Assembly (NCBI GenBank): GCA_002269645.1
Contig: NIVC01003577.1
Coordinates: 26,161 to 90,160, forward strand
DNA: 64,000 nt
Reading direction: 5' to 3'
Origin: Macrostomum lignano
Taxonomy: Eukaryota
Shown piece by piece: positions 2,628 through 64,000 of this stretch. Position numbers and translations under genes: made by a program. Below the pieces are notes generated by a model, which was not told the origin of the DNA, did no database searches, and saw only the letters and a program-made list of their open reading frames with translations. Position 1 is the stretch's first letter, and every line of letters starts with the position of its first letter.

Positions 2628-3667
2628 TTAATTAATTTCTGTGTCAGCTGGTATCACTAGCAGTTCAGCTCTAGTGAATGACCGCGTGGGGGATTTAGGG
2701 TTAAAGGCCTGAGATAAAAAGTAATAGTCACCGGAGTCGGAGGTAAAATGTCTGTCTATTTTATGTACATCAAGGCTGAAGTATGGATCTGTAGCTCTTC
2801 TTTTAGTGTCCTTCTCTAGCTCTCCAGGTAGATATAAAAACCGTAGAAACTCAGAGTTTGTCAGTATGTATGGTGATTCAACTCCGGTAGCTTAGGGTAG
2901 TTAGAGGTGTGTTTTGTGTTGTGTGTGTTGTGTGGGGTTGTCGTGTTGTTGTCTGTTCTATGAGTTGCCTTAAGTTCGACAGTGTCTTGTTTAATTGCAT
3001 GGGACGGTTTCAATCCAGTCATGCGTGTGACTTCATTGTTCAGTTGCTCTATAACAGTGGGGAGGCGGTCTGTCCATTTTGAATAGTACTGACCACTTTT
3101 TAGTTTCAGCTCTTCAGCTGTCTGCTGCTTAGTGAATAGCCTCTTGGCTAGAGTTAGATTGAATCTTTCCACAAAAGCCTGGTCTCTGTGCAAGTTTGTT
3201 CTGCCATAGCGAATCTCTGTGTTTTTCTTTTCCATAAGGGATTTCACTGCACCCATGAATTCCTTACCCGGGTCGGTCATAAGGGTTTGGGGGTGTGTGA
3301 GCGGAGAGTTTTTATAAATATCTTGCAGTGCGCTGGCAACAACCTCTGACTTCTTCGTCTTGAGTGGGCGAGCTTCCTTATATCTGGAAGCAATGTCTAT
3401 TACTGTGAGAGCATACTTGTAGCCCGAGTCATTGGGGAGAAACAGAAGATCTGCTTGGTGTGCCTCATTAGGTTTATAAATACTGAAATGGGGCCTTTCA
3501 AATTTTACTGGTGGGAAATAGACTTGAAAGACAGCCTGCTTAGAGAGCCATTTTTCTACTGTAGCTTTTGGTTCCTTACTCAGCTCCATGAGTTTACTAA
3601 CGGCATTTTTACCTACAAAGAATCCTTTGTCGCTGTAGTAGAGTTTTTTAAGTTTCTGATCTGTCAT
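2628..3667 (-). pseudogene. Retroviral-like DDE integrase of Polinton type; one frameshift near 2880
   Basis: HQADLLFL...YALTVIDIASRY...LMTDPGKEF...QAFVERFNLTL (D,D,E core). The shifted frame continues FLRFLYLPGELEKDTKRRATDPYFSLDVH...FTRAELLVIPADTEIN* to 2628. Confidence 0.9.
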
Positions 3668-4829: not shown

Positions 4830-7187
4830 TGCGACAAGTGTCAGAAGACGGCTCGAGTCCCAGGCAATCACAAGGTACCACTAGTCCAAGTGCCTGGAGT
4901 GGAGGAGGCCTTCACCAAAGTTATCATCGATATCAGTGGACCGTATACGAGGACTGCGAGTGGTCACCAGTACATCCTGTCGATTATCGATGCGGCTACT
5001 CGATTCCCCGAAGGAGTCCCGCTGCGAAAGATCGACGCTGAGTCCGTAGCGAAGGCATTGGTGGACTGCTTCGTGAGGACCGGATTCCAGAGGGAGATCC
5101 AGAGCGATAAGGGTACTAACTTTTCATCAGCACTGCTGCAGGCCCTGTACCGGTGTACCGGGGTCGAGGGCATCCAGTCGACGCCGTACCATCCGCAAAG
5201 CCAGGCGTTGGTGGAGAGGTTCCACGGCACTCTCAAGAATATGTTGAGGAGACTACCAGCTCGCGAGAAAAAGAAGTGGGACCAGTACCTACCGTATCTG
5301 CTGTTCGCCATTCGGGAGGTGCCCAACGAAACAACTGGCTTCTCCCCATTCGAACTTTTGTATGGACGCACTGTGCGGGGACCGCTAGATCTACTGCGGC
5401 AGACCTGGGATGAGCAGCTCTCCGAAGAGAAGAAGGACATCATCTCGTTCGTGCTGGCCCAGAGAGACCGACTGCGGGCTGGCCAGGAAGCGGCACGGAA
5501 CAGCGAAGAGCTAGCACGGAAGCGTCAGAAACTCTGGTACGACCGGCAGTCGCGGGAACGAGAGTTGCAGCCCGGAGATCAGGTGCTGCTGCTGCTGCCA
5601 TCGTCATCCAAGAAGCTTCACGCTGAATGGCGCGGTCCCTATGAAGTACTGGAGAGGTGCAGCGATGTGAACTACCGGATTCGGATGGGCCCTGCGACAA
5701 ACACGTTTCATGTCAACCTGCTTAAGAAGTACAATTCACGAGAGGCGGTTTTGATGCAGCTTCCAGCGGCAGCTACGAGTGCTCCTGAGTTGTCCGAACA
5801 TCTGACACCGGCCGAGAGAGATCGTCTCCTGCAGCTGGTGCAGGACTTCGCGGGCGTCTTCAGCGAGATCCCGGGCAGGACTGACCTAGTGGAGCACCGT
5901 ATCCGGACGACATCTGACCGCGTAGTGCGCATCCGGCCGCGACGGGAGCCGCAGGCGCATCGGCAGGTGCTCCAAGAGGAGATTCAACGCATGCTGGACC
6001 TCGGGGTGATCGAACCATCTGACAGTGACTACTGCTCCCCGGTCTGTCTGGTGGCCAAGAAGGACGGCTCAGTCCGGTTCACTGTCAACTTCAAGGCGCT
6101 GAATGAGCTGGTGGCCTTCGACTCCTATCCGATGAAGAACATCGAGGACCTACTGGAGCGGGTCGCCAAGGCCAAGTTCATATCTAAGCTAGACTGCTGC
6201 AAGGGCTACTGGCAAATTCCACTGTACGAGGATTCAAAGCGATTGACGGCTTTCGCGGCCTGCGGCAAGCTGTATCACTTTACTGTGATGCCCATGGGCT
6301 TAAACTGCAGCAGCGCGACGTACCAGAGGCTCATGGACAAGCTGTTCCAAGGGCTGGACAACGCGGAATCCTACATCGATGACATCGCCGTGTTTAGCGC
6401 GACATTCGAGCAGCACGTCAAGGACCTGAGGGAAGTATTTGGTCGCCTTAAGGCTGCCGGTCTAACGGTGCAACCCCGAAAGTGCTACCTGGGCGGCAAC
6501 TCTGCTGACTACCTGGGTTTCAAGCTCGGCGGAGGCGAGATCGGTACAAGCGAGGACCGAGTGCGGACAATCACGGCGCTGGCTCAGCCCCGGACCAAGG
6601 CTCAGCTGCGATCTGTGCTCGGAGTGCTCAACCACTACCGTCGGTTCGTGCCCGATTACTCAGAAAAGGTGGCGGCCCTGACGGACCTCACGAAGAAGTC
6701 GGCACCCGATGACCTGACGGCGGCCTGGGGAGAGCAGCAGACGCGAGCCTTCGAGACTGTGAAATCTCTGCTGGCGAGCGAGCCGGTGCTGCGCGCGCCG
6801 GACTACAGTCGGCAGTTCACCTTGGAGACTGACAGCTCGGAGACTGGGATCGGCGCGGTGCTAACGCAAGAGTTCGAGGACGGCATCCATCCCGTGCTAT
6901 TCGTATCTCGGCGGTTGACTTCGGCGGAGCGGAGCTACGCGACGATCGAGAAGGAGTGCCTCGCCGTGCGCTGGGCGGTCGAGAAGCTGCGGCACTACCT
7001 GCTAGGCCGCCGGTTCGTCATCAAGTCCGACCATAAGCCGCTGCAGTACCTGCAGATGGACCACGCCAACCCACGACTCCAGCGGTGGGCCTTCTATCTG
7101 TCCGGCTATGACTACGAGATCCAGTACCAGCCAGGCGAAAGCAACACGGTGGCCGATGGTCTCAGCAGGATCTGGGCTAGTGACTGA
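4830..7187 (+). CDS. pol: Pol polyprotein fragment: integrase (CxxC, DDE, GPY) - reverse transcriptase - RNase H
   Basis: Open frame from CDKC (4830); IIDISGP/IQSDKGTNF/VERFHGTLK; WRGPYEV; RT KLDCCKGYWQIP...MPMGL...YIDDIAVFS; RNase H TDSS...EKECLA...SDHKPL...ADGLSR. Confidence 0.95.
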   Translation, partial: CDKCQKTARVPGNHKVPLVQVPGVEEAFTKVIIDISGPYTRTASGHQYILSIIDAATRFPEGVPLRKIDAESVAKALVDCFVRTGFQREIQSDKGTNFSSALLQALYRCTGVEGIQSTPYHPQSQALVERFHGTLKNMLRRLPAREKKKWDQYLPYLLFAIREVPNETTGFSPFELLYGRTVRGPLDLLRQTWDEQLSEEKKDIISFVLAQRDRLRAGQEAARNSEELARKRQKLWYDRQSRERELQPGDQVLLLLPSSSKKLHAEWRGPYEVLERCSDVNYRIRMGPATNTFHVNLLKKYNSREAVLMQLPAAATSAPELSEHLTPAERDRLLQLVQDFAGVFSEIPGRTDLVEHRIRTTSDRVVRIRPRREPQAHRQVLQEEIQRMLDLGVIEPSDSDYCSPVCLVAKKDGSVRFTVNFKALNELVAFDSYPMKNIEDLLERVAKAKFISKLDCCKGYWQIPLYEDSKRLTAFAACGKLYHFTVMPMGLNCSSATYQRLMDKLFQGLDNAESYIDDIAVFSATFEQHVKDLREVFGRLKAAGLTVQPRKCYLGGNSADYLGFKLGGGEIGTSEDRVRTITALAQPRTKAQLRSVLGVLNHYRRFVPDYSEKVAALTDLTKKSAPDDLTAAWGEQQTRAFETVKSLLASEPVLRAPDYSRQFTLETDSSETGIGAVLTQEFEDGIHPVLFVSRRLTSAERSYATIEKECLAVRWAVEKLRHYLLGRRFVIKSDHKPLQYLQMDHANPRLQRWAFYLSGYDYEIQYQPGESNTVADGLSRIWASD

Positions 7188-12175: not shown

Positions 12176-12313
<138 letters not shown>

Positions 12314-12929
12314 ATTGACTGAAAGAAACGTAAACTGAATGAAAGCAATCAGATCCAATTTATCTTAAGTAAAAGTTCAACTGCTGCTGTGCTGTGTCTT
12401 TGTTCCCCCCAAGCTATGCTTTATTCTATCTGTCAATCATTTCTCGAAAAAAAGAGAAATAAAAACTTACATCAATCGGTCTCTGTCTTTGGATTTTCAT
12501 TTTCAATATAAATATTTTCGCAATCAAAGAATAAAAAACTACATTAATATAGAGATTAAGTTTAAATATCCATCAATTGCTTTCACTTTCGAAGGCTGAA
12601 CTGCAGTGTCTCTGCAGGTGCCAATAGGGTTGACAGAAGTGTTTAAACACGCGGTCCCACTGCCGCCTCTCTCTTTCCTCTGAGACCAGAGAATGCAGTG
12701 GATGGTGCTAGTCTAGCGATTAGTCTGTCATTTGCTTATAAAGTTATACGAGTACTAACTGCGTTCTGAATATGATTGACGTAGTCGTAATATCAACGTT
12801 CGATGAGCGTTATTAACCCATGTTAATGAGTGGGTCAAAAAGGGGATGTTACTGGCAGTTGTAGAAGTGTTTTGAGTGAGTAGCTAGTGAGTGTCTGATT
12901 GAGTGACTGAGTAACTCAGCTACTGTGTT

Positions 12930-26644: not shown

Positions 26645-27425
26645 GTACCTGGTGAGGGATCTGGGTGTACCTGGTCAGGTATCTGGGTGTACCTGGTTAG
26701 GTATCTGGGTGTACCTGGTCAGGTATCTGGGTGTACCTGGTTAGGTATCTGGGTGTACCTGGTTAGGTATCTGGGTGTACCTGGTCAAGTATCTGGGTGT
26801 ACCTGGTCAGGTATCTGGGTGTACCTGGTTAGGCATCTGGGTGTACCTGGTCAAGTATCTGGGTGTACCTGGTCAGGTATCTGGGTGTACCTGGTTAGGT
26901 ATCTGGGTGTACCTGGTTAGGTATCTGTGTGTACCTGGTCAAGTATCTGGGTGTACCTGGTCAGGTATCTGGGTGTACCTGGTCAGGTATCTGGGTGTAC
27001 CTGGTCAGGTATCTGGGTGTACCTGGTCAGGTATCTGGGTGTACCTGGTCAGTTATCTGGGTGTACCTGGTCAGGTATCTGGGTGTACCTGGTTAGGTAT
27101 CTGGGTGTACCTGGTTAGGTATCTGGGTGTACCTGGTCAAGTATCTGGGTGTACCTGGTCAGGTATCTGGGTGTACCTGGTTAGGTATCTGGGTGTACCT
27201 GGTTAGGTATCTGGGTGTACCAGGTCAGGTATCTGGGTGTACCTGGTCAGGTATCTGGGTGTACCTGGTCAGGTATCTGGGTGTACCTGGTCAGGTATCT
27301 GGGTGTACCTGGTCAGGTAATCTGGGTGTACCTGGTCAGGTATCTGGGTGTACCTGGCCAAGTATCTGGGTGTACCTGGTCAAATATCTGGGTGTACCTG
27401 GTCAGGTATCTGGGTGTACCTGGGC
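26645..27425. repeat. 22-bp minisatellite (GTACCTGGTCAGGTATCTGGGT) in Kv intron 4
   Basis: Direct inspection. Confidence 0.96.
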
Positions 27426-27444
27426 AACAAAAGTTGTGTCTCAC

Positions 27445-28278
27445 CTGGCCACGTCTGCGGCACCAGATCGCCGTATCCAACCGTTGTCATGGTAACTAAT
27501 GACCACCAGAACCCGTCAAACATGGAGGTGAATCTCGAGTCGGTGCCCTGCCGATTGCACTTGGAGCAGTCGGTGGCTCCGCCCGCCGCTCCGCCCCCTG
27601 CGGCTGTCTGACTGTCGGATTTCTCGCAGAAGAAGATCAGAGTGCTGAAAAGCAGAGTCCCCAGAGCGACGAACACCCCCATGAGCATGAGGTCGCGGAA
27701 GGAGGTGCGCAGAGTGTAGATGAGCACTTGCAGACCCCGGTAGTGCCTGCCGATCCTCAGCAGCCTCATGAACAGGGTGATCTTCAGGAAGGCGATGTAC
27801 TCAGCCGGTCCAAAGTAGCTGCTGTCGGAGAATTCCACAATGCCGCAGAAGAACTTCAGCAGCTCGTTAATGTAGAAGGGTAAAATTGACAGAAAGTCAA
27901 TTATGGTGTAGTTATTCTTGAAATAGGCCAGCTTGTTCTTGCAGCAGATGAACCGGACGCAGAAATCGAACGTGAGGGTGCCGAACGCGATCCAGTCTGG
28001 AAAGGTCAGCCAGTCCACTTTGATCTTGGCGCTGGCGTCCGTTCGGTTGCCGTACCAGGCGGGGTGCTTGGCCGAGTAGAAGGCCACCTCTCCGGGCGTC
28101 ATGGGTCGCTGGAATCGTTCCGAGGTGCTGGCCACGAAGCTGAACACCGTGTACAGCACCGTGACGCTCAGGATGACGGCGTACACGGCGGCTGGGAAAC
28201 TCGACGAGGGATGATCGAGAATCTTCCAGCAGCGTTTGCGCAGAGCGATCAGGGCTTCTTTGATTCGCTTGCGCCAGC
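27445..28278 (-). CDS. Shaw: Shaw/Kv3-like K+ channel, exon 4 (S1-S5 and pore)
   Basis: CWKILDHPSSS; IIDFLSILPFY (S3); FMRLLRIGRHYRGLQVL (S4); FWWSLVTMTTVGYGDLVP (selectivity filter); acceptor TTAAG|GC, donor CCAG|GTGAGA; length 834 (multiple of 3). Confidence 0.95.
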
Positions 28279-43901: not shown

Positions 43902-44914
43902 TTGATGACTCTGGATGCCACCTGTCAGAACCAAAGAGCAAAATTGACGGTTGACGCGAATGTTTTTCATTGTCGTCTATACGAGTAACCTTCTGCCAAA
44001 CAGCTGCTGTAATTACAACATATTTAATCGTAAAAATGTCACTTAAAATTTTGCAACGCAAATATAATCACAGAAATTTCATCAGTGCGCACTTCACCAC
44101 TTTATATATACAGCTCATATTCTTTTTTTACTGCATTGTTCATAATTTCAACTGAAGTAGAATTTTATTCTCCTGTTTAAAAAATAAACCGCCGCTACTA
44201 AATTTTTAATAATTTTGTCTGTCATATTTTGTTATTTTTTCTTTTAAAACGCAAAACGTACTAACTATACTACTCAGTTTTTATACTCAGTAATGAGACC
44301 GGTAAATACTCAACCTTGAATTGTCTGAAGCTGGTTGTGAGTGTCAAAGTCAGGGTGTCCCGGTGTTACAAGTTGGGTGTCAAGGCGTCAGACACAGGGT
44401 GCCGGAAGTGCCAGGGTCAGTGTCAGGAATTCACACAGTCACCCAAAATGCACTATTCCAGCCACTTACTACTTGCAGTAGTGCGTGCCAGCCGGGGGGC
44501 AACAGCAAAGAAAATACATTGAAAGGCTTGAACCCAAATTAACACACAACTCGCGTCAAAAAGAAGATCAGTCTGTCAGTTTTATTTTTTAATTCTCTAA
44601 GCGAATTTACTAGCTCGTCCTTGAGTTTATTATACGATTAGGTACGTTCGAATTTTGATATTATAATAAAAAAATAATAATTTTTAATATACTATTATTT
44701 TCAATATCTCGTATTTTCAACTGGAAGAAACTCGACTCCGTCGATCATTATAAAACCGGCTGGAGGAAATCTACAACTCGTTACGAAATACAAACTCCGC
44801 ACAAGGTGAATATCGAGAGAACATACAATATTGTGTTCTGTGTAGAATACTGGAAACAGAGTCAAGATTTTTGTAAGGAATATAAAAAAGTTCAAGCGGG
44901 GATTCTTTCCCTCT

Positions 44915-45075
44915 GCGTCTATCTTTCTGTCTGTCTTTCTGTTTGTCTGTCTGTCTGCCTGTCTATCTCCCTGTCTGTCTGTCTATCTGTCTATTTCCCT
45001 GTCTGTCTGTCTACCTCCCTGTCTGTCTGTCTGCCTGTCCATCTCCTTCTCTGTCTGTCTGTGTGTCTGTCTGTG

Positions 45076-45124
<49 letters not shown>
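44915..45124. repeat. (TCTG)n microsatellite
   Basis: Direct inspection. Confidence 0.95.
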
Positions 45125-45126
<2 letters not shown>

Positions 45127-45666
45127 GGTGGGTCCTCGCTAAAAGCGGTGACGGCATGTCTGTCGGGCACCATCGCCTGCTCCATGAAGATGGCCTCGCT
45201 AAAGAGGCTGCACCGCGCCGTCGGGCTGACTGGCAGCGGCTGCTGACTTACGCAGGTGCTCAGCACCTTCTCCAGGCCGCGCTTTCCCGGCTCCTCGCTG
45301 AACATCGATCTGTAGCCTCGTCTTGAAGCTTCAGTCGTTTCAGCCACCTCGGCGTAGGCATTCAACAGGCGCGTCTCCTCGGTGGCCTCCAACCGACAGC
45401 GTCGAAGGATTCCCGTATCGGAGCGGGCGTTGCCATGATCGAATCCTTCGAGTTCCTCATCGGACGTGTGAGATGCCCCAAGCAACGGCAGCATCGCCGC
45501 GTGGTCCATCGGCGACTGTGTGGCCGGGTGACCGCCGGTCTGCTGACGTCTGCGTCGTTCTGAGAGCCAGGCGTCGCACCAGTTCCAGAGTCGCCAGGCG
45601 ATCACGGCTAGTAGGAGCCCCGTGCTGGCCAGGAGGAATGTCTCGGCGAGGCTCAGAGCTGTGAAC
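45123..45666 (-). CDS. Uncharacterised protein with an N-terminal TM helix, terminal exon
   Basis: Acceptor GCACGCAG|G; [29 protein letters not shown]...; GC-rich open frame to the stop at 45123. Confidence 0.6.
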
Positions 45667-56026: not shown

Positions 56027-56228
56027 GTTAGTGCCTTTCAGTAATGTTTGCTTGGTTACAATAAATGGTGTACAACATCTATTATTAAGATGCTCTCTCA
56101 CACTTTCACATCATGAATGAGTTAGCTGTTCATGGATTCATTAAGGCTGAGTTATTCGGTTCGTTTTGCCCAGTTTATAAAACTCAGTTTCAAAGTGTCG
56201 CCCCGAACGAAAATCACCCCCTACTCAG

Positions 56229-56427
56229 GCACATCTGTGACGAGTTGTTGGTCTCTCACGACGATATCATGCGAAATCCGGCCTTCTTTAAAGAGGCCGT
56301 GACAGTGATGGATCGTCTGGTCAGACAGATGGACTACAAAGGCTGCAGGGATCTGTTTGGAAAAGTGTTGGGCTTGTACAAGACTTTCAGCGAAGGTGAA
56401 GACAAAGTCTTTGTTCCTGCGTTCAAG
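56229..56427 (+). CDS. MED23: Mediator subunit 23 exon
   Basis: HICDELL...VRQMDYKGCRDLFGKVL matches MED23 LVCESLI...IGGVDYKGVRDLLKVIL; acceptor CTACTCAG|G, donor AAG|GTTTGT. Confidence 0.88.
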
Positions 56428-56860
56428 GTTTGTTGCAATATTGTTTTGTTTGTTTAACAACGCTTTTAAATCTCACAAATGGCGCCTTTTAAATTCAACA
56501 AATGGCACTTTTTAAAGCCTACAAATGGCGCTTTTTAAATCCTAAAAATTTCGTTTTTTAATTCTCACAAATGGCGCTTTTAAAATTCAACAAATGGCGC
56601 CTTTGGAATCCTACAAATGACGCTTTCAACTGTACAAGTTGTTTTTTTTATCCGACAATTGAGGCTAATAAATACAAGAAATAAGTAGAGAATTTCTATG
56701 GAATTTATTGAAGCTTTAGTAAGATTTAGAAGTTTACCCGTGTGTAATAAAGTTGCTTACTGTCGATTTCTTTTAAATCAAATATTTATCTTACTTACGA
56801 GCTACAACTCGAAATTATTTATTGCTTTATAACTGTCTGTGACACCCACTGAACCCGCAG

Positions 56861-56965
56861 CTCATCACCACCCTGATGGATCGCTCGCTTTGCCTGATGC
56901 CCGCCTATTTTGCTCTGCACGAAGTGACTAAACTGCCCCCGGCTGAGCAGACCAATCTGCATCCG
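56861..56965 (+). CDS. MED23: Mediator subunit 23 exon
   Basis: LITTLMDRSLCLMPAYFALHEVTKL matches MED23 VIAYILERNACLLPAYFAVTEIRKL; acceptor CCCGCAG|CTC, donor CCG|GTGAGG. Confidence 0.88.
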
Positions 56966-57074
56966 GTGAGGCTGCTGGGCTGATTTATAGATAGATAGAT
57001 AGATAGAAAGACGAAATCAATTAAAAAACCGCACACACAGTGAGAGAAGGTACAATTTGATTTGTTTATAAACT

Positions 57075-57115
57075 AGACCAAATTTTCGGCCAAATCGTAG
57101 CTTTCGTCAGGGTCC
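57075..57115 (-). ncRNA. Minimal type I hammerhead ribozyme motif 1 (stem II base mismatch)
   Basis: GGACC-CUGACGA-A-AGCUACGAUUUGGCC-GAA-AAUU-U/GGUC. Confidence 0.6.
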
Positions 57116-57923
57116 GAAAATTTGTTTTGCGAGAAACAGTAAAGCAATGGTTTATAAAATATGAGCACTCAAAAAGAGTTTGCTGGGGACATTAAAATCA
57201 ATAAATTGTTAGAAGTGATGGGAGCGCAGCGATGAGAGATAAACTGATGAACTAACCCGGCTTGACCACGTGCAGTCAGTGCACGGGGTTTGGATGGGCA
57301 CAGAATGTCTTTTATAGAGGATTTCCAAGTTCCATTTTTTTCAAACACAATTCGTAACTTACCGTAACACCGTCGAGTCACAGTTGAACCGTCTTTCGCT
57401 GTCGACTCCCTTGAACGCTTCCCTTAATTGTGGAAGTCGTTCAAAAGATTCATTCTTCACAATGACTTTGCATTGCGTCCTGGGTGCTCACATCTCAGGT
57501 GTCTGCGTTCAATCGGACGTTCTCCTCAGTCCTCTTGGTTGGCATGGCCGGTCGAATAAAAGTCTTGAGTTGTTCTGTTTTGCTTTGCAGTTATTTTGGG
57601 ATGGTCTGACAGTTTTCATAGTGATGAACAGATCGGGAAGAGTTTCTTGACCAACCGAACCAGCCGGGCATTGTCTACTGTCATCGCACCTTTCGCACTT
57701 CGACGTTTACGAGTACGAGTACAATGATGGTGACATTCTCAGAGCCTCTGTCTTGCGACCTTGACCGGCGCCCATCCCTCCGAAGATGGTACTGGGTATC
57801 AGGTCTCCGACGGTTTGACTGCTGCTGATGCTGCGATTTGCGGGTTTCACCAGCTATCGATATCTATTCTATCGATAAATATGAATAAAGCAGAAATCAG
57901 AAGTCGTACTTTTCTTCAAAACT

Positions 57924-57960
57924 ACCAATATTTCGGCAAAATCGTGGCCTTCGTCAGGTT
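57924..57960 (-). ncRNA. Minimal type I hammerhead ribozyme motif 2 (weak stem I)
   Basis: AAC-CUGACGA-A-GGC(CACGAUUUU)GCC-GAA-AUAU-U/GGU. Confidence 0.6.
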
Positions 57961-58491
57961 AAAAGAAAATAAAATTTTGACAGTGAAGTTATTGCATCAT
58001 AACCAGGTTATTTATACACCAGCTTTGTCTGGGTGCACTAAACAGTGTTGTGTAAAAAGTGTATTAAAGCACACTGATTGGTTAGAGCTTTGCGGCTAAT
58101 GCCTCACACAAAAAATTATAGGCATTAGGAGCTATATAAAGTCACATTGAACGATTATTAAAGTGTGACTAAACAGCTTGAAAGGTATAATGAATACGTT
58201 TTAAAAAAAGTAAATTAAATTGTTATAGAGCACTGAGACCTCACTTAGGCTATCAAACTATCAGGCTATCAGTTGGCGGCGTCTGGACATACGAGTAGAC
58301 CACTTTCTGCTCAGTCCCTGGACACAGACAACTGGGCAGTGCCGTTCAGTAGTTGATGAAGTATATTTGATTCATTGATAGATAAATAGACGTTTGAAAA
58401 AGACCACTCACACATTAGCAGCTCTAACTAAGTTAGCCAAGAAATATCAAAGAGAGACGCAGAGGTCATAACTAATATAAATCAATTTAGT

Positions 58492-58532
58492 GAACCGATA
58501 CTTCGGCTGTGGATTGGCCTTCGTCAGGGTTC
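58492..58532 (-). ncRNA. Minimal type I hammerhead ribozyme motif 3 (GAAA to GAAG variant)
   Basis: GAACC-CUGACGA-A-GGC(CAAUCCACA)GCC-GAA-GUAU-C/GGUUC; perfect 5-bp stem I. Confidence 0.6.
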
Positions 58533-58749
58533 TTAGTATAATTATTAATAACAAAATGCAACGAATTTATATTGTTAGTGGGAAATAAAATATATATGTT
58601 CTTCTAAGTCACTGCATACCCGGCACCGCTGACAGGCGGTAGGAAAACGACACGCCGGGTAGAATATTTGCCGCCACGATAGTCTGATCAGACTCCTTGA
58701 TTCAATCAGGAATTGGCTCCACCGGCTCAATTGTACACTGTAAACCCCA

Positions 58750-60380
58750 GGGATCCAAAAAGGTCAAGTATTGGTCGGTATGTTAGGGTCCGCGGCGTCG
58801 CTACACCCTAAATGTCTGAATGTATGGATCCGAAAAAGGTCCAGTAGGGGTCCGTATGTTAGGGTCCGCGGCGTCGCTATATACGGACCCTAAATGTCCG
58901 AATGTATGGGTCCGAAAAAAGGTCAAGTAGGGGTCGGTATGTTAGGGTCCGCGGCGTCGCTACACCCCAAATGTCCGAATGTATGGATCCGAAGAAAGGT
59001 CAAGTAGGGGTCGGTATGTTAGGTCCGCGGCGTCGCTACACCCCAAATTTCCGAATGTATGGATCCGAAAAAAGGTCAAGTAGGGGTCGGTATGTTAGGT
59101 CCGCGGCGTCGCTCACCCCAAATGTCCGAATGTATGGATCCGAAAAAAGGTCAAGTAGGGGTCGGTATGTTAGGTCCGCGGCGTCGCTCACCCCAAATGT
59201 CCGAATGTATGGATCCGAAAAAGGTCCAGTAGGGGTCCGTATGTTAGGGTCCGCGGCGTCGCTATATACGGACCCTAAATATCCGAATGTATGGATCCGA
59301 AAAAAGGTCCAGTAGGGGTCGGTATGTTAGGTCCGCGGCGTCGCTCACCCCAAATGTCCGAATGTATGGATCCGAAAAAAGGTCAAGTAGGGGTCGGTAT
59401 GTTAGGTCCGCGGCGTCGCTCACCCCAAATATCCGAATGTATGGATCCGAAAAAAGGTCAAGTAGGGGTCGGTATGTTAGGTCCGCGGCGTCGCTCACCC
59501 CAAATGTCCGAATGTATGGATCCGAAAAAGGTCCAGTAGGGGTCCGTATGTTAGGGTCCGCGGCGTCGCTATATACGGACCCTAAATGTCCGAATGTATG
59601 GATCCGAAAAAAGGTCAAGTAGGGGTCGGTATGTTAGGTCCGCGGCGTCGCTACACCCCAAATGTCCGAATGTATGGATCCGAAAAAAGGTCCAGTAGGG
59701 TCCGTATGTTAGGGTCCGCGGCGTCGCTATATACGGACCCTAAATGTCCGAATGTATGGATCCGAAAAAAGGTCCAGTAGGGGTCAGTATGTTAGGGTCC
59801 GCGGCGTCGCTACACCCCAAATGTCCGAATGTATGGATCCGAAAAAAGGTCAAGTAGGGGTCGGTATGTTAGGTCCACGGCGTCGCTCACCCCAAATGTC
59901 CGAATGTATGGATCCGAAAAAGGTCAGTAGGGTTCCGTATGTTAGGTCCGCGGCGTCGCTATATACGGACCCTAAATGTCCGAATGTATGGATCCGAAAA
60001 AAGGTCAAGTAGGGGTCGGTATGTTAGGTCCGCGGCGTCGCTCACCCCAAATGTCCGAATGTATGGATCCGAAAAAGGTCAAGTAGGGGTCGGTATGTTA
60101 GGTCCGCGGCGTCGCTACACCCCAAATGTCCGAATGTATGGATCCGAAAAAAGGTCAAGTAGGGGTCCGTATGTTAGGGTCCGCGGCGTCGCTATATACG
60201 GACCCTAAAGTCCGAATGTATGGGTTCGAAAAAAGGTCCGGCAGGGGTCCGTATGTTAGGTCCGCGGCGTCGCTATATACGGACCCTAAAGGTCCGAATG
60301 TATGGGTTCGAAAAAAGGTCCGGCAGGGGTCCGTATGTTAGGGTCCGCGCGTCGCTATATACGGACCCTAAAGGTCGAAT
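58750..60380. repeat. GC-rich ~74-77-bp satellite with two unit types
   Basis: ATGTCCGAATGTATGGATCCGAAAAAAGGTCAAGTAGGGGTCGGTATGTTAGGTCCGCGGCGTCGCT followed by CACCCCAA (or ACACCCCAA) or ATATACGGACCCTAA; about 22 units. Confidence 0.96.
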
Positions 60381-61199
60381 GCAAGAAGGGTCCGCATGTA
60401 CGAGCGTAGTTTCGTTTGCAAGGTTGACTAGCTAAATTCAGATTTATTGGCTTTCGCACGCTTAGAAGTTAGATCAACTGATGCAAATTCTTTTTAATAA
60501 AAAGTTAATGTACACAATCGAGAACACCCATCATTTTTGTATTATAATACGAAAAAAATCACTGACAAGAAGAAAATTATACGATATGCAAGTCTTGAAT
60601 TTGTAACCATGAATTACAACACTAATATCTGTCTGCCAGATAAATGCTCCCTATCGTATTATAATTATCACATGCAGTGTATATTGACATACACTCATTA
60701 CTTGGTGTTTTATTATTTTTTCGCAACGTGAAATACTAATACAACATACATACACACGCATGAAAGTATTTCAATTATTACGTCAACGTCAAAAAGTATG
60801 CAAAAATTACATGGAACTACACGAAAATTAGATGCAAACATTATAAAAAAACATTACTTTATAAAAATATTGTTTATATTTTATAATGTCATACATGATT
60901 TTATATATAAATGAGTGATCCAGTGCTGCAGACAATACCATTTACAAGCTTCAGCTTAATATAAGAATAAACAGTATAAAAATAGCTATGCAGTATCAAT
61001 TCTGTATTAAGAAAAATTGTCATTTGTTTATTAAGGTAGCCGGTAATTGGGTTAAACTTATTAAGGTAAGTTTAAAGGGTTTTTTATTAGTGGAGACATT
61101 AATAAACCTTAAGCTTAGGTGGTGTTTAAGGGGGAACATAGACTTTCATTATACGAATAAAATGTCGAATGCTAAGTTAAAGTTTTATTAACGAAGTAT

Positions 61200-62400
61200 A
61201 GCAATCAGCGACTGGGAAGGTGCGCAGGACACAGCATCACGTCGAGGGAGTTTTCACAATACTTCTAATACGTCTCGAGGGAGGCTTCCAGATAGGGCAC
61301 ATGCTGCAGGTAAACGATACGGAACAGATTGCAATTACTTTCGCCTTCCTTCAGAATTTCAATTGGCAGCTCAGTATCAAAAAAGTTTCGCAGGGTCAAT
61401 CCTTAATCGATCAAGGTGCAGGCAAAGGCCGTTTATTAGAATGGTGTCGTCGTTATCACATTCAGCGTTCAGAAACGGCTAGCAGTACAAGTACCGCTTC
61501 ATTGCATCTCGTTCTTGCCACACATGCCGGAGTGCACCGCATACATTTTGTTCAATATCCTCAGGTGTTCGAGGAAACACATAGTCAGCCTTGCGTCTAG
61601 AGTTATACAACTGAATCATAAGAAATGCCTCTTGCAACTGAACACGTGGTAGTGATAATGGCTTATACAATTCAGCCTCCTCTTCAACAGTTCTCTCTTG
61701 GCAACGCACGACTCGCACACTAAATAGACTTTTCATATTGCTTAATACCTCTTCGATTTCCATTGTGTGGAAATTTTTGTTCAACCTAATTCGGTCAACT
61801 TCGTGACTTTCAGGAACGCATTCCACATCTCCAAAAATGACGCTTTTGACAAGCTTGCTTGTCGATGTAGTCGTACTCTCAGCATCCTCACAGTTGACTT
61901 GCAGGCGCTTTGCTTGTACTACGTTTTCGTCATCATCGGACGCATCTACGATGGTAGCAATTTTTCGGCGCTTACTTGCAAATGAAACTACGTTTTCTTC
62001 GTCACTATCCTCATCATTTTCCGCCATGCACGACGCGGAAATGCCGGAGTTGCTGAATTAGCAGCGAATCTTCGTGAATTTTCTGCCACCAAAAAATAGT
62101 CCATCGCTCGACCCGTCTCGCATTCCTGGGTACATAGAAACGATGGAGATGGTTATGTCATTTAGCTCTTTTCCATAAAGATACGGATCTTGCCGGCTTT
62201 TATAATTGTTAAAGACGTCATTGATGATGTAAGTTAAAAACTTGTTGACGAAATTCGCCTTTAACATAAGGTCCGTTCCAAACCGAGGATTGCGCTCTAG
62301 CTTATTGAGGGCGGACTCCAAATCAGCCATTTTTGGCCACGGACTCCACGTGGACCCCTGGAGTTTACAGTATAGCAACACCAGCAGGGGCGCCCTCGCA
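61200..62400 (-). pseudogene. Disrupted ORF remnants (61479-62027, 62058-62381), probably transposon-derived
   Basis: Protein-like frames with acidic/NLS-like segments and ELNDITISIVSMYPGMRDG, broken by stops; no confident family assignment. Confidence 0.35.
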
Positions 62401-62589
62401 GCAGCAGCAGCGGGAGTGCCGGAAAGCCCAGAATCAGCAGAAGCAGGGCCGCCTGGAAGCCAGAAGCAGCAGCATTAGGGCTGAGTCAGCCACCACCAAA
62501 AACTCTGTAGGCAAGACTTCTTCATCACCGGATTCTTTCAAAAAATTGGTTCCTCTTTAATAAGATGAAGTATTTTCCTGGGATTTGCC

Positions 62590-62760
62590 AACGAGACTTT
62601 GCAGACAACGCCGCCTGGTGGCCATCTTTTGCGCACTGCCTCTATATGGTTGGCGAAAGTCAGTTGGTCGTCTAGGCGAAGGCCAAGGAACGTGGGTGTC
62701 GGTCGTAGGTTAATTCCTGTCCCTCAATGCGCAGCGTTGGGAGGATCTTTCCGCGCATTC
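62590..62760 (-). mobile_element. Non-LTR retrotransposon RT C-terminal fragment
   Basis: LRIEGQELTYDRHPTFLGLRLDDQLTFANHIEAVRK matches the (Y/F)LGxxLDxxLTFxxHI motif of LINE RTs. Confidence 0.7.
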
Positions 62761-63141
62761 ACTGGTGTCTAATGTTTTTAAAGTAAATTAAATTGTTACA
62801 GAGCACTACGACCTTACTTAAACTGGTTAAAGAAGGGTAAATAATTACATACTGATGCATATGCAGTAATTTAATTGTTTATCCTGGCAAGCCACAAGTA
62901 TCAGTGGCGGCGTCTGGACACAGATCACCGTCTGCTCAGTCCCTGGACACAGACAACTGGCACTGCCGTTTAGTAGTTAATGAAGTATATTTGATCCATA
63001 GATAGATAGAAAGATAGATGGATATATAGATCGAAAGATCGATAAATAGATAAATAGAGATATCTACGAGTATAAGACAGTCTGAAACCGCAACGACACG
63101 CACACGGAAGATTGAAGTTTTCAGGTGTCAAACTTTGAAAT

Positions 63142-63180
63142 AACCGATATTTCGGCCAAATCATGGCCTTCGTCAGGGTT
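63142..63180 (-). ncRNA. Minimal type I hammerhead ribozyme motif 4 (best preserved)
   Basis: AACC-CUGACGA-A-GGCCA(UGAUU)UGGCC-GAA-AUAU-C/GGUU: intact core, 5-bp stem II, palindromic AUAU stem III, AUC cleavage triplet, AACC/GGUU stem I. Confidence 0.8.
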
Positions 63181-63639
63181 TATTTGAGGGTATATAAAGT
63201 AGCAATTATTTTGTAGTGAAGTTATTTCCTCATAACATTATTATTTATGTACCAGCTTTGGCTGGGTGCACTGAGCAGTGTTGTGTAAAAATGCACGTAC
63301 ATATAGCTAATACAAAGAGGGAATTAAAGCACTCTGACTGGTTAAGGCATTACAGCTTAGAAATGTGACTAACCAGCTTGAAAAATACTACAAATAAGTT
63401 ATTTAGAAAATAAATAATTGTTATAGAGCACTGAGAACTCTGACTAATTAACGAAGTGTAAATAATTTGATGCACATACGAGATTAAATTAGTTTGAGTA
63501 GGCCAGACCGGCCACAAGTAGCAGTTCATGGCATCTGGTCAACAGACGTAGTAGTCGTAGTCTTAGTAGAGTCGTACTGGTAGACTGTTTTAATGTAGCC
63601 AGACAAGTCACGAGTCGCAGTTGGCGGCGTCTGTTCACT

Positions 63640-63905
63640 GACTGCTGTCTGCTCAGACCCTGTTCACAGACTGCTGTCTGCTCAGACCCTGTTCACAGAC
63701 TGCTGTCTGCTCAGACCCTGTTCACAGACTGCTGTCTGCTCAAGACCCTGTTTTACAGACTGTCTGTCTGCTCAGACCATGTTTACAGACTGCTGTCTGC
63801 TCAGACCCTGTTTACAGACTGCTGTCTGCTCAGACCCTGTTTACAGACTGCTGTCTGCTCAGACCCTGTTTACAGACTACTGTCTGCTCAGACCCTGTTC
63901 ACAGG
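63640..63905. repeat. 29-bp minisatellite (ACTGCTGTCTGCTCAGACCCTGTTCACAG) amplified from a segment of the ribozyme-bounded module
   Basis: TCTGCTCAG.CCCTG..CACAG is present once at about 58305 and 62930 and in tandem here. Confidence 0.9.
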
Positions 63906-64000
63906 CAACTGGGCACTGTATTTCAGTAGTAGACTAATAGTAGAAAGTTGTAGTAGTAGTCCTAGTCGTAGTAGAGTCGTACGGGTGTCTATATTTTATA

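What the first reader, a model, noticed from the sequence alone, without database searches (positions are those of the whole stretch)
57075..63180. Cluster of four minimal hammerhead ribozymes with covarying stems
Four minus-strand motifs share CUGACGA-A-stem II-GAAA(G) and a loopless stem III (AAUU, AUAU, AUAU palindromes; GUAU in the variant), followed by a U17/C17 cleavage residue and stem I. Stem I covaries (GACC/GGUC, GAACC/GGUUC, AACC/GGUU) and the stem II loops differ, which argues for structural selection. Established: minimal type I hammerheads with palindromic stem III occur in Penelope-like elements and animal retrozymes and can cleave as dimers. They lie antisense to, and downstream of or inside an intron of, MED23 and are invisible to ORF annotation.
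Basis: partly seen in the sequence, partly recalled or inferred. Interest (0 to 1): 0.85.

Follow-up and report, generated by a model that had tools for sequence, protein, structure and literature searches.

The report
Penelope-type minimal hammerhead motifs in repeats
Four copies of a well-known transposon-borne mini-ribozyme motif (the loop-less "minimal hammerhead" of Penelope-like retroelements) sit antisense in an intron of the MED23 gene; one looks intact, three are mutated, and the whole thing is ordinary transposon debris rather than a new kind of RNA.

Summary
A covariance model built only from external sequences finds exactly these four in 128 kb searched (52.8, 28.9, 38.0 and 35.1 bits, in coordinate order).

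They match the minimal type-I hammerhead described for Penelope-like elements (PLEs): a CUGANGA core, an unpaired base after A9, a G10.1-C11.1 stem II, GAAA, a palindromic loop-less helix III and a short stem I.

Only HHR1 is intact. HHR2 has G15.1. HHR3 has an A×G mismatch at stem I pair 2. HHR4 has A10.1×C11.1.

HHR1-3 belong to one ~570-nt repeat inserted as partial tandems. HHR4 is from a related family. No RT or GIY-YIG coding sequence is in the window, so these are non-autonomous or solo copies.

Covariation among the four copies is thin. It is strong in 49 external relatives, two of which sit next to RT+GIY-YIG ORFs.

All four copies lie antisense in the MED23 intron that starts at 56966, so they are not part of the MED23 pre-mRNA.

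Verdict: these are new members of a known kind, of low interest. Rfam's hammerhead models miss them.

The parts
63138..63183 (-). HHR1, the intact minimal hammerhead motif: AACC|CUGACGA|A|GGCCA-UGAUU-UGGCC|GAAA|UAU|C17|GGUU. The predicted cut is 3' of C at 63146.
   Evidence: External model R1 scores it 52.8 bits, E 3.9e-13. It is the only site passing the strict descriptor. Its monomer minimum-energy fold is stems I+II at -12.5 kcal/mol.
58489..58534 (-). HHR2, a degenerate copy. Stem I is GAACC/GGUUC, stem II has only 3 bp with a 9-nt loop, and GAAG gives G15.1 (helix III GUAU). C17 is at 58497.
   Evidence: R1 scores it 28.9 bits, E 3.4e-6. See alignment A4.
57919..57964 (-). HHR3, a degenerate copy. 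Stem I is UUAAC/GGUAG with an A2.2×G1.2 mismatch, stem II has C10.4×U11.4, and helix III is AUAU. U17 is at 57927.
   Evidence: R1 scores it 38.0 bits. See A4. Its minimum-energy fold is not the hammerhead.
57072..57117 (-). HHR4, a copy from a different repeat family. Stem I is GGACC/GGUCU, A10.1×C11.1 breaks the conserved pair, and helix III is AAUU. U17 is at 57080.
   Evidence: R1 scores it 35.1 bits. Only the ~42-nt hammerhead aligns with the other copies. Its minimum-energy fold is not the hammerhead.
57927..58496 (-). Full repeat unit C, 570 nt from the HHR2 cut site to the HHR3 cut site. Together with HHR2 and the stretch after HHR3 it forms one partial-tandem insertion (about 58535-58600 down to about 57850).
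   Evidence: Self-BLAST and alignments show that the sequence downstream of HHR2 matches that downstream of HHR1, and the sequence upstream of HHR3 matches that upstream of HHR1. The unit fold has z = -1.37.
63146..63960 (-). Repeat unit A, ending in HHR1. Its 5' part is at or beyond the window end. It contains a 29-bp minisatellite expansion at 63631-63904.
   Evidence: BLAST segments 63933-63874, 63671-63618, 63440-63364 and 63291-63143 match unit C at 73-82%. TRF result; sequence.
62780..63145 (-). Repeat unit B, truncated, directly after HHR1 and therefore in tandem with unit A. It includes an (ATAG)n tract at 62998-63058.
   Evidence: BLAST segments 63014-62899 (85%) and 62820-62780 (90%) match unit C. 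See alignment A2 and TRF.
56988..57007 (.). (GATA/TCTA)n tract about 70 nt 3' of HHR4. Similar tracts follow HHR1 (62998-63058), HHR2 (about 58371-58391) and HHR3 (about 57854-57880). It is possibly the 3' terminus or the target site of these elements.
   Evidence: Read from the sequence and alignment A2. The terminus/target reading is an inference.
56861..56965 (+). MED23 exon, with acceptor cag|CTC and donor CCG|gtgagg. The intron that starts at 56966 holds all four motifs in antisense orientation.
   Evidence: Pfam Med23 (PF11573), E 2.3e-11, profile positions 88-198, for the ORFs at 56089-56454 and 56843-56980. Splice sites were read. No further Med23 match was found between 57000 and 63000.

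Best explanation
The four motifs are Penelope-like-element (PLE) type minimal type-I hammerhead motifs. They are carried by short repeats with no coding capacity, resembling a PLE pseudo-LTR (pLTR), that were inserted by retrotransposition as partial tandems, antisense, into a MED23 intron.

In the element's own minus-strand transcript, two hammerhead copies are expected to pair through their 4-nt palindromic helix III. Stem I then forms between the 5' strand of one copy and the 3' strand of the other, giving a double hammerhead. Each core cuts 3' of residue 17, probably slowly and with help from protein. This would trim the element RNA to unit length, and a PLE reverse transcriptase/GIY-YIG endonuclease supplied from elsewhere in the genome would copy it back into DNA.

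At this locus the copies are old, at 76-85% identity to each other. One (HHR1) keeps every consensus feature. The other three each carry a lesion at a conserved position and are most likely inert. The motifs have no role in MED23 pre-mRNA, because they are on the other strand.

Shown: motif identity, repeat and tandem anatomy, class-level covariation, association of the class with PLE ORFs in external contigs, and the intron and antisense position.

Inferred: cleavage, dimer use, mobilisation in trans, and present inactivity.
For: - The motif anatomy matches the published PLE minimal hammerhead point by point: an unpaired base between 9 and 10.1, G10.1-C11.1, palindromic 15.2/16.2 and a short stem I (PMC4209133; sequence).
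- A metagenome scan used a pattern that left the stem I 5' strand and 15.2/16.2 free. It returned more than 120 loci. CC lay upstream in 109 of 121 hits. In 89 unique sequences, 15.2/16.2 was Watson-Crick in 69 and pair 2.3/1.3 in 77, each with four pair types.
- In 49 representatives, 90.7% of cells are paired. The covariation score is 0.362 against 0.097 shuffled, 0 of 500 shuffles as high, and all slid registers score far lower.
- Model R1, built from those sequences, finds exactly the four window sites. HHR1's score falls within the 45-58 bit range of the external copies.
- In external loci L051 and L073, an RVT_1+GIY-YIG ORF lies on the same strand upstream of the motif. L042 has motif, RT ORF, motif. 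L016 and L053 have short tandems of 313 and 450 nt. L057, L076, L077 and L088 have inverted pairs. These are the arrangements described for PLEs (PMC8557442).
- In the window, HHR2-unit-HHR3 and unitA-HHR1-unitB are partial tandems of one ~570-nt repeat.
- There is no tRNA-like head.
Against: - No RT or GIY-YIG coding sequence is in the cluster or anywhere in the 64-kb window. The link to PLEs therefore rests on the motif type and the insertion architecture, not on a linked ORF.
- There is no nucleotide homology between the window repeat and the external loci beyond the motif.
- Rfam hammerhead models give no hit even at E<=10.
- The designed double hammerhead of HHR1 is less stable than two monomers, -20.6 against -25.0 kcal/mol.
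- The only tandem pair, HHR2/HHR3, has poor cross-complementarity in stem I: 3 bp in one combination and 2 non-contiguous pairs in the other (read from the sequence).
- Training sequences for R1 were chosen with a pattern taken from the window motif, so the core match is partly circular.
- Self-cleavage was not tested.
Confidence: 0.85

Rival explanations
1. The HHR2-unit-HHR3 segment is an active non-LTR retrozyme. Transcription, cleavage at both hammerheads and ligation would give a ~570-nt circular RNA that serves as the transposition intermediate.
For: A complete unit is bounded by two same-strand hammerhead motifs 570 nt apart. Metazoan retrozymes are tandem repeats bounded by type-I hammerheads and are proposed to derive from PLE pLTRs (PMC7229834; bioRxiv 10.64898/2026.07.22.740005).
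Against: - Both flanking motifs are damaged: G15.1 in HHR2 and A×G in stem I of HHR3.
- Their stems I are not cross-compatible for a double hammerhead.
- Described retrozymes carry canonical type-I hammerheads with loop-loop contacts in 150-450-bp units, often in many copies. Here the motif is the minimal kind, the unit is 570 nt and there are only two copies.
- The unit RNA folds no better than shuffles (z = -1.37, 9 of 100 shuffles as good).
Confidence: 0.08
2. The motifs are the pseudo-LTRs of a once-autonomous PLE whose RT/EN ORF between HHR1 and HHR2 has been destroyed or replaced by later insertions.
For: HHR1 and HHR2 are same-family, same-strand copies 4.6 kb apart, a spacing compatible with pLTR-ORF-pLTR. 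The interval is a patchwork of other repeats: a 75-bp satellite, AT-rich DNA and a LINE-like fragment.
Against: - tblastn with four PLE ORFs and Pfam scans find no trace of RT or GIY-YIG in the interval.
- The repeat unit continues directly after HHR1 and is complete between HHR2 and HHR3 without any ORF.
- The two ORFs present (62474-61479, minus strand) have no homologues and no Pfam domain.
Confidence: 0.05
3. The motifs are host-functional ribozymes that act on MED23 expression or on an antisense transcript.
For: They are clustered in one intron close to the 5' end of MED23. HHR4 lies only ~110-150 nt from the splice donor.
Against: They are antisense to MED23 and so absent from its pre-mRNA. 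Three of the four carry lesions at conserved positions. They are parts of repeated transposon units. Antisense orientation in introns is the usual survivorship pattern for transposons (general knowledge).
Confidence: 0.02

Closest known systems
Minimal hammerhead ribozymes of Penelope-like elements (min-HHR; Cervera & de la Peña 2014, PMC4209133; dimer cleavage by Lünse et al. 2017 as cited in PMC6765202)
   Same: The shared features are a type-I topology, a CUGANGA...GAAA core, one unpaired nucleotide between A9 and 10.1, G10.1-C11.1, a loop-less palindromic helix III, a 4-5 bp stem I, tandem placement and many diverged or solo copies. Low intrinsic activity is expected.
   Different: No RT/GIY-YIG ORF is linked in this window. 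The carrier is a ~570-nt ORF-less repeat, and three of the four copies are mutated at conserved positions.
Metazoan non-LTR retrozymes (de la Peña et al. 2020, PMC7229834; Li et al. 2026 bioRxiv 10.64898/2026.07.22.740005)
   Same: Both are short non-coding repeat units bounded by same-strand type-I hammerheads. Both are non-autonomous, with a proposed PLE origin.
   Different: Retrozymes carry canonical hammerheads with loop 1-loop 2 contacts, have units of 150-450 bp often in long arrays, and give abundant, stably folded circRNAs. Here the motif is minimal, the unit is 570 nt, there are only partial tandems, and the fold is not special. The preprint reports retrozymes to be depleted from introns, whereas this cluster is intronic.
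Poseidon PLE of Anolis carolinensis (PAc) hammerhead (Frangieh et al. 2024, PMC11167929)
   Same: It is a PLE hammerhead lacking a stable helix III. Its cleavage is seen only with the element's protein present, which offers a model for how weak minimal motifs could work.
   Different: In PAc the motif overlaps the start of the ORF, and cleavage was not needed for insertion in vitro. No protein partner is encoded here.
Rfam Hammerhead families (type I/III/II, HH9, HH10)
   Same: They share the same catalytic core.
   Different: None of them matches these motifs even at E<=10. The likely reason is that the models expect a closed helix III and longer stems.

Membership tests
Hammerhead ribozyme, PLE-type minimal type I | Catalytic core C3-U4-G5-A6-N7-G8-A9 and G12-A13-A14 | tested here: met
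   All four copies have CUGACGA and GAA.
Hammerhead ribozyme, PLE-type minimal type I | A15.1-U16.1 pair and a non-G residue 17 | tested here: inconclusive
   HHR1, HHR3 and HHR4 have A15.1-U16.1. HHR2 has G15.1 (a G·U pair). Residue 17 is C, C, U, U.
Hammerhead ribozyme, PLE-type minimal type I | One unpaired nucleotide between A9 and 10.1, then a G10.1-C11.1 stem II | tested here: inconclusive
   The unpaired A is present in all four. G10.1-C11.1 is present in HHR1-3 but is A×C in HHR4. Feature definition from PMC4209133.
Hammerhead ribozyme, PLE-type minimal type I | Loop-less helix III with complementary 15.2/16.2 (a palindrome that allows dimerisation) | tested here: met
   The pair is UA, UA, UA, AU in the four copies. 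In the external set it is Watson-Crick in 69 of 89 sequences, with four pair types.
Hammerhead ribozyme, PLE-type minimal type I | Stem I of about 4-5 bp flanking the core and the cleavage site, with covariation | tested here: met
   HHR1 has 4 bp, HHR2 5 bp, HHR4 5 bp (one G·U), and HHR3 has 5 positions with one A×G mismatch. Pair 2.4/1.4 shows AU, UA and GC.
Hammerhead ribozyme, PLE-type minimal type I | Match to a curated hammerhead covariance model | tested here: not met
   Rfam 15 gives no hammerhead hit at gathering score or at E<=10. A custom model built from external min-HHRs does match all four.
Hammerhead ribozyme, PLE-type minimal type I | Site-specific self-cleavage (as a dimer, or assisted) | not testable with these tools
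   This needs transcription and cleavage assays. Thermodynamic prediction does not favour the double hammerhead.
Penelope-like element (autonomous) | Single ORF with an RT and a GIY-YIG endonuclease between pseudo-LTRs | tested here: not met
   There is no RVT_1 or GIY-YIG in 56500-64000 and no PLE-like coding sequence in the whole window.
Penelope-like element (insertion architecture) | Partial tandem (a 5'-truncated copy followed by a full copy), with the hammerhead in the repeated terminal part near the 3' end | tested here: met
   HHR2 + unit + HHR3 + ~75 nt, and unitA-HHR1-unitB. The hammerhead lies ~70-150 nt before the (TCTA)n tract, where homology ends.
Penelope-like element (insertion architecture) | [quoted passage not shown] | not tested
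   The boundaries are known only to within tens of bases, and there are no other genomic copies to compare.
Non-LTR retrozyme | Tandem units of 150-450 bp, each with a canonical type-I hammerhead (loop 1-loop 2 contacts) | tested here: not met
   The unit is 570 nt. The motif is the minimal kind with an open stem I and no loop 1. Definition from PMC7229834.
Non-LTR retrozyme | Unit RNA predicted to be compact and highly self-paired, and expressed as circRNA | tested here: inconclusive
   The fold z-score is -1.37, not distinct from shuffles. Expression cannot be tested here.

The most novel reading that the evidence does not exclude
The 570-nt unit bounded by HHR2 and HHR3 represents a class of short ORF-less elements that use the minimal PLE hammerhead rather than the canonical type-I one. 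These elements would be processed into unit-length or circular RNAs and mobilised in trans by PLEs. That would make them a direct intermediate between PLE pLTRs and animal retrozymes, in an invertebrate lineage whose proteins are absent from the large protein collection searched.
Probability: 0.12. Interest if true: 0.4.

Novelty: new member of a known kind. Interest (0 to 1): 0.2.

Why it matters
It matters little on its own. Minimal hammerheads of this architecture are reported in thousands of copies per genome across metazoans. This locus adds four more copies, three of them decayed.

There are two modest points of value:
- Rfam's curated hammerhead models miss this class completely, so genome annotation pipelines overlook it. 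A small custom covariance model recovers the motifs cleanly.
- The locus shows a short ORF-less carrier of the minimal motif in partial-tandem form. This fits the recent proposal that animal retrozymes derive from PLE pseudo-LTRs.

Tried and rejected
- Rfam at gathering score on the whole window and at E<=10 on 56500-64000 gave no hammerhead hit. It gave only two chance Corona_FSE hits in the 75-bp satellite.
- A loose IUPAC pattern did not separate signal from chance.
- My first strict scan misread HHR3 as having lost one C. The ungapped alignment shows a C2.2-to-A substitution instead.
- A PDB sequence search with concatenated + strand ORFs found nothing. Pfam then confirmed the MED23 exons.
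- The search for an RT/EN partner was negative: Pfam on ORFs of both strands and tblastn with four PLE ORFs.
- Attempts to identify the organism or more copies failed. The 182-aa ORF is not on record and has no homologues. The MED23 exon query found no candidates. No nucleotide homology links the window to the 122 fetched loci. The organism therefore remains unknown. An invertebrate animal is only my inference, from the low by-eye similarity of the MED23 exon to the human protein as I recall it and from the transposon content.
- The viral-contig scan gave two hits without stem I complementarity, which are probably chance.
- A tRNA-derived SINE head is absent.
- Chance occurrence and a host function in MED23 pre-mRNA were both rejected (see the rival explanations).
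- Lünse et al. 2017 is not held in the library. It is cited only through the review PMC6765202.
Full report
**Observation**

Reading the minus strand of 57000-63300 shows four motifs of the form stem I 5' strand - CUGACGA - A - stem II hairpin - GAAA/GAAG - 4 nt - C/U - stem I 3' strand.

A loose pattern (CTGANGA...GAAR...) is not above chance, with 7 matches against 7.28 expected. A strict minimal-hammerhead descriptor required the core, an optional unpaired base, stem II of at least 3 bp, GAAA, U16.1, complementary 15.2/16.2, a non-G residue 17 and stem I of at least 3 bp. It gave no hit in 400 first-order Markov simulations of the window. In the real window it is met once, by HHR1.

**Anatomy of each copy**

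| Copy | Coordinates (minus strand) | Stem I | Stem II | Helix III / residue 17 | Lesion |
|---|---|---|---|---|---|
| HHR1 | 63183-63138 | AACC/GGUU | GGCCA/UGGCC, with G10.1-C11.1 | AUAU, C17 | none |
| HHR2 | 58534-58489 | GAACC/GGUUC | 3 bp, 9-nt loop | GUAU, C17 | G at 15.1 (GAAG) |
| HHR3 | 57964-57919 | UUAAC/GGUAG | C10.4×U11.4 | AUAU, U17 | A×G mismatch at the second stem I pair |
| HHR4 | 57117-57072 | GGACC/GGUCU | U·G at the fourth stem II pair | AAUU, U17 | A10.1×C11.1 at the conserved base of stem II |

Each of the three non-intact copies is thus hit at one position that the family conserves.

Covariation among the four copies is limited:
- Pair 2.4/1.4 takes three pair types: AU, AU, UA, GC.
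- Pair 15.2/16.2 takes two: UA three times and AU once.
- The covariation score is 0.347 against 0.145 for shuffles (5 of 500 as high). Slid registers score lower.
- The remaining differences between the same-family copies HHR1, HHR2 and HHR3 mostly break pairs.

**Context: a repeated unit, not isolated motifs**

Self-BLAST and alignments show that HHR1-3 belong to one repeat of about 570 nt.
- The stretch from the HHR2 cut to the HHR3 cut (58496-57927) is a complete unit.
- The sequence downstream of HHR2 matches the sequence downstream of HHR1 (85-90% over the alignable blocks).
- The sequence upstream of HHR3 matches the sequence upstream of HHR1 (76%).
- HHR1 sits at the junction of unit A and a truncated unit B (63145-62780). 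Unit A spans 63960-63146 and has an internal 29-bp minisatellite expanded at 63631-63904.
- Homology upstream of HHR2 is at best weak, and homology fades about 75 nt downstream of HHR3. That insertion is therefore a 5'-truncated copy followed by a full copy.
- HHR4 shares only the ~42-nt motif with the others, so it comes from a related family.
- Each motif is followed 60-140 nt later by a (TCTA)n-like tract.
- There is no tRNA-like head.
- No RT or GIY-YIG domain is encoded in 56500-64000 on either strand, and no PLE-like coding sequence is present anywhere in the window.

**External evidence for the motif class**

I scanned metagenome contigs with a pattern that fixed the core, three stem II pairs and GG at 1.1-1.2. 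It left free the stem I 5' strand, N7, 15.2/16.2 and the outer stem positions.

- The two bases upstream were CC in 109 of 121 hits (1/16 expected by chance).
- N7 took all four bases.
- In 89 unique sequences, 15.2/16.2 was Watson-Crick in 69 and pair 2.3/1.3 in 77, each with four pair types.
- On an alignment of 49 representatives, 90.7% of cells pair. The covariation score is 0.362 against 0.097 shuffled (0 of 500 as high), and every slid register is far lower.

A covariance model built from these 49 sequences finds exactly the four window motifs, all on the minus strand, and nothing else at E<=10. HHR1 scores 52.8 bits, HHR3 38.0, HHR4 35.1 and HHR2 28.9. External copies score 45-58 bits and their degenerate neighbours 24-44.

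One caveat applies. The training set was selected with a pattern derived from the window motif, so agreement in the core is partly circular. Agreement in stem I and helix III is not.

**Link to Penelope-like elements**

In loci L051 and L073 an ORF with RVT_1 and GIY-YIG domains lies on the same strand upstream of the motif. L006 and L042 have RVT_1 ORFs. The arrangements seen in the external loci are:
- L042: motif, RT ORFs, motif, over 7.6 kb.
- L016 and L053: same-strand tandems 313 and 450 nt apart.
- L057, L076, L077 and L088: inverted pairs.

These are the arrangements described for PLE insertions: partial tandems forming pseudo-LTRs, adjacent inverted truncated copies, and a hammerhead near the 3' end (PMC8557442).

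**Folding**

- For HHR1, and with two extra pairs HHR2, the monomer minimum-energy structure is stems I and II of the hammerhead.
- For HHR3 and HHR4 it is a different hairpin.
- The designed double hammerhead of two HHR1 copies has stem I and helix III formed between the copies. It evaluates at -20.6 kcal/mol, against -25.0 for two separate monomers. This fits reports of very low in vitro activity, even as dimers, and of protein-assisted cleavage (PMC4209133; PMC6765202; PMC11167929).
- In a double hammerhead, stem I forms between the 5' strand of one copy and the 3' strand of the other. For the only tandem pair this gives three contiguous pairs for GAACC with GGUAG, and two non-contiguous pairs for UUAAC with GGUUC (read from the sequence). 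The pair is poorly suited to cleave.
- The 570-nt unit RNA folds no better than shuffles (z = -1.37).

**Host gene**

ORFs on the + strand at 56089-56454 and 56843-56980 match Pfam Med23 at profile positions 88-198 of 1304 (E 2.3e-11). The second exon runs 56861-56965, with a cag|CTC acceptor and a CCG|gtgagg donor.

No further Med23 match occurs in + strand ORFs between 57000 and 63000. If the gene continues beyond the window, all four motifs lie in the intron that starts at 56966, antisense. HHR4 is about 110-150 nt from the donor. They are therefore not part of the MED23 pre-mRNA.

**Mechanism**

The best-supported reading is that these are hammerhead motifs of short, non-autonomous, PLE-related repeats. 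The proposed sequence of events is:
1. In the element's own transcript, two copies pair through helix III.
2. Each core cleaves after residue 17, probably with help from protein.
3. This gives unit-length RNA with 5'-OH and 2',3'-cyclic phosphate ends.
4. A PLE RT/EN encoded elsewhere in the genome copies the RNA into new sites as more-than-unit-length partial tandems.

The anatomy and the class membership are shown. Cleavage, dimer use and trans-mobilisation are inferred from the literature on the class. At this locus the copies differ by 15-24% and three are damaged, so present activity is unlikely except possibly for HHR1, which has no nearby intact partner.

**Comparison and novelty**

The closest known system is the PLE minimal hammerhead. 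The motif-level membership features are met by HHR1 and partly met by the other three. The element-level feature, an RT-EN ORF, is not met in this window.

Animal non-LTR retrozymes are similar in being short ORF-less units bounded by type-I hammerheads, and they are proposed to derive from PLE pseudo-LTRs. They carry canonical hammerheads in 150-450-bp units and give stable circRNAs, which is not what is seen here.

The finding is a new member of a known kind. Its interest is low.

**What led nowhere**

- Rfam models gave no hammerhead hit.
- The PDB sequence search found nothing.
- Homologue and contig look-ups for the intervening 182-aa ORF and for the MED23 exon found nothing.
- There is no nucleotide homology to the fetched loci.
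- The two viral-contig hits are probably chance.
- The source organism remains unidentified.

Noticed in passing
window 58751-60357: There is a satellite of 75-bp units (20.6 copies, 89% matches) with higher-order periods of 232 and 307 bp. It lies directly 5' (in the minus-strand sense) of the HHR2 insertion. The units contain GGGTCC...GGACCC hairpin-like inverted repeats. The only Rfam 'hits' in the region are two chance matches to Corona_FSE here.
   Followed up: partly
window 63631-63904: A 29-bp minisatellite (9.3 copies, 95% matches) has expanded from an internal segment of the hammerhead-bearing repeat unit (...cagggtctgagcagacagcagtctgt...). It is present once in units B and C.
   Followed up: partly
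window 62998-63058, ~58371-58391, ~57854-57880, 56988-57007: Every hammerhead motif is followed 60-140 nt later by a (TCTA/GATA)n-like tract, and repeat homology ends near it after HHR3 and HHR4. This may mark the 3' terminus or a microsatellite target of these elements. Some PLE clades are reported to prefer microsatellite targets (PMC8557442).
   Followed up: partly
window 61479-62474 (-): Two adjacent minus-strand ORFs (138 aa and 182 aa) lie between HHR1 and HHR2. They have no Pfam domain. The 182-aa ORF has no homologue in the 5.8-billion-cluster protein search and no exact record. Their nature is unknown.
   Followed up: yes
window 62541-62723 (-): A short ORF (GTGINLRPTPTFLGLRLDDQLTFANHIEAVRKR...) resembles, from memory, the region just C-terminal to the RT domain of LINE elements. 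It sits where repeat unit B is truncated. It has no Pfam hit.
   Followed up: no
window 4890-7187 (+) and 2861-3667 (-): A 765-aa ORF has domains in the order integrase core, Tf2-type SH3, RVT_1, RNase H. Integrase before RT is unusual for a Ty3/gypsy-type RT and recalls Gmr1-like elements (from memory). A second integrase-core ORF lies on the opposite strand.
   Followed up: no
window 27380-28186 (-): A 268-aa ORF has Ion_trans and Ion_trans_2 domains (E 5.7e-29). It is probably an exon of a voltage-gated cation channel gene.
   Followed up: no
window 56463-56626: A 23-bp tandem repeat (7 copies; also reported with periods of 46 and 69 bp) lies in the MED23 intron between the two exons detected.
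   Followed up: no
L057 812-1305; L076 1141-1256; L088 66-190; L077 16-2709; L042 42-7670; L016 18-378; L053 35-528: In the metagenome loci the same motif class occurs as inverted head-to-head pairs, as short same-strand tandems (313 and 450 nt), and flanking RT ORFs 7.6 kb apart. Many JAAUYG01 contigs begin or end within about 100 nt of the motif, which suggests that assemblies break at this repeat.
   Followed up: partly
window 12180-12326 and 44800-45250: There are long (TCTA)n and (GTCT)n-type microsatellites. The first cross-matches the tract that follows HHR1 and HHR4.
   Followed up: no
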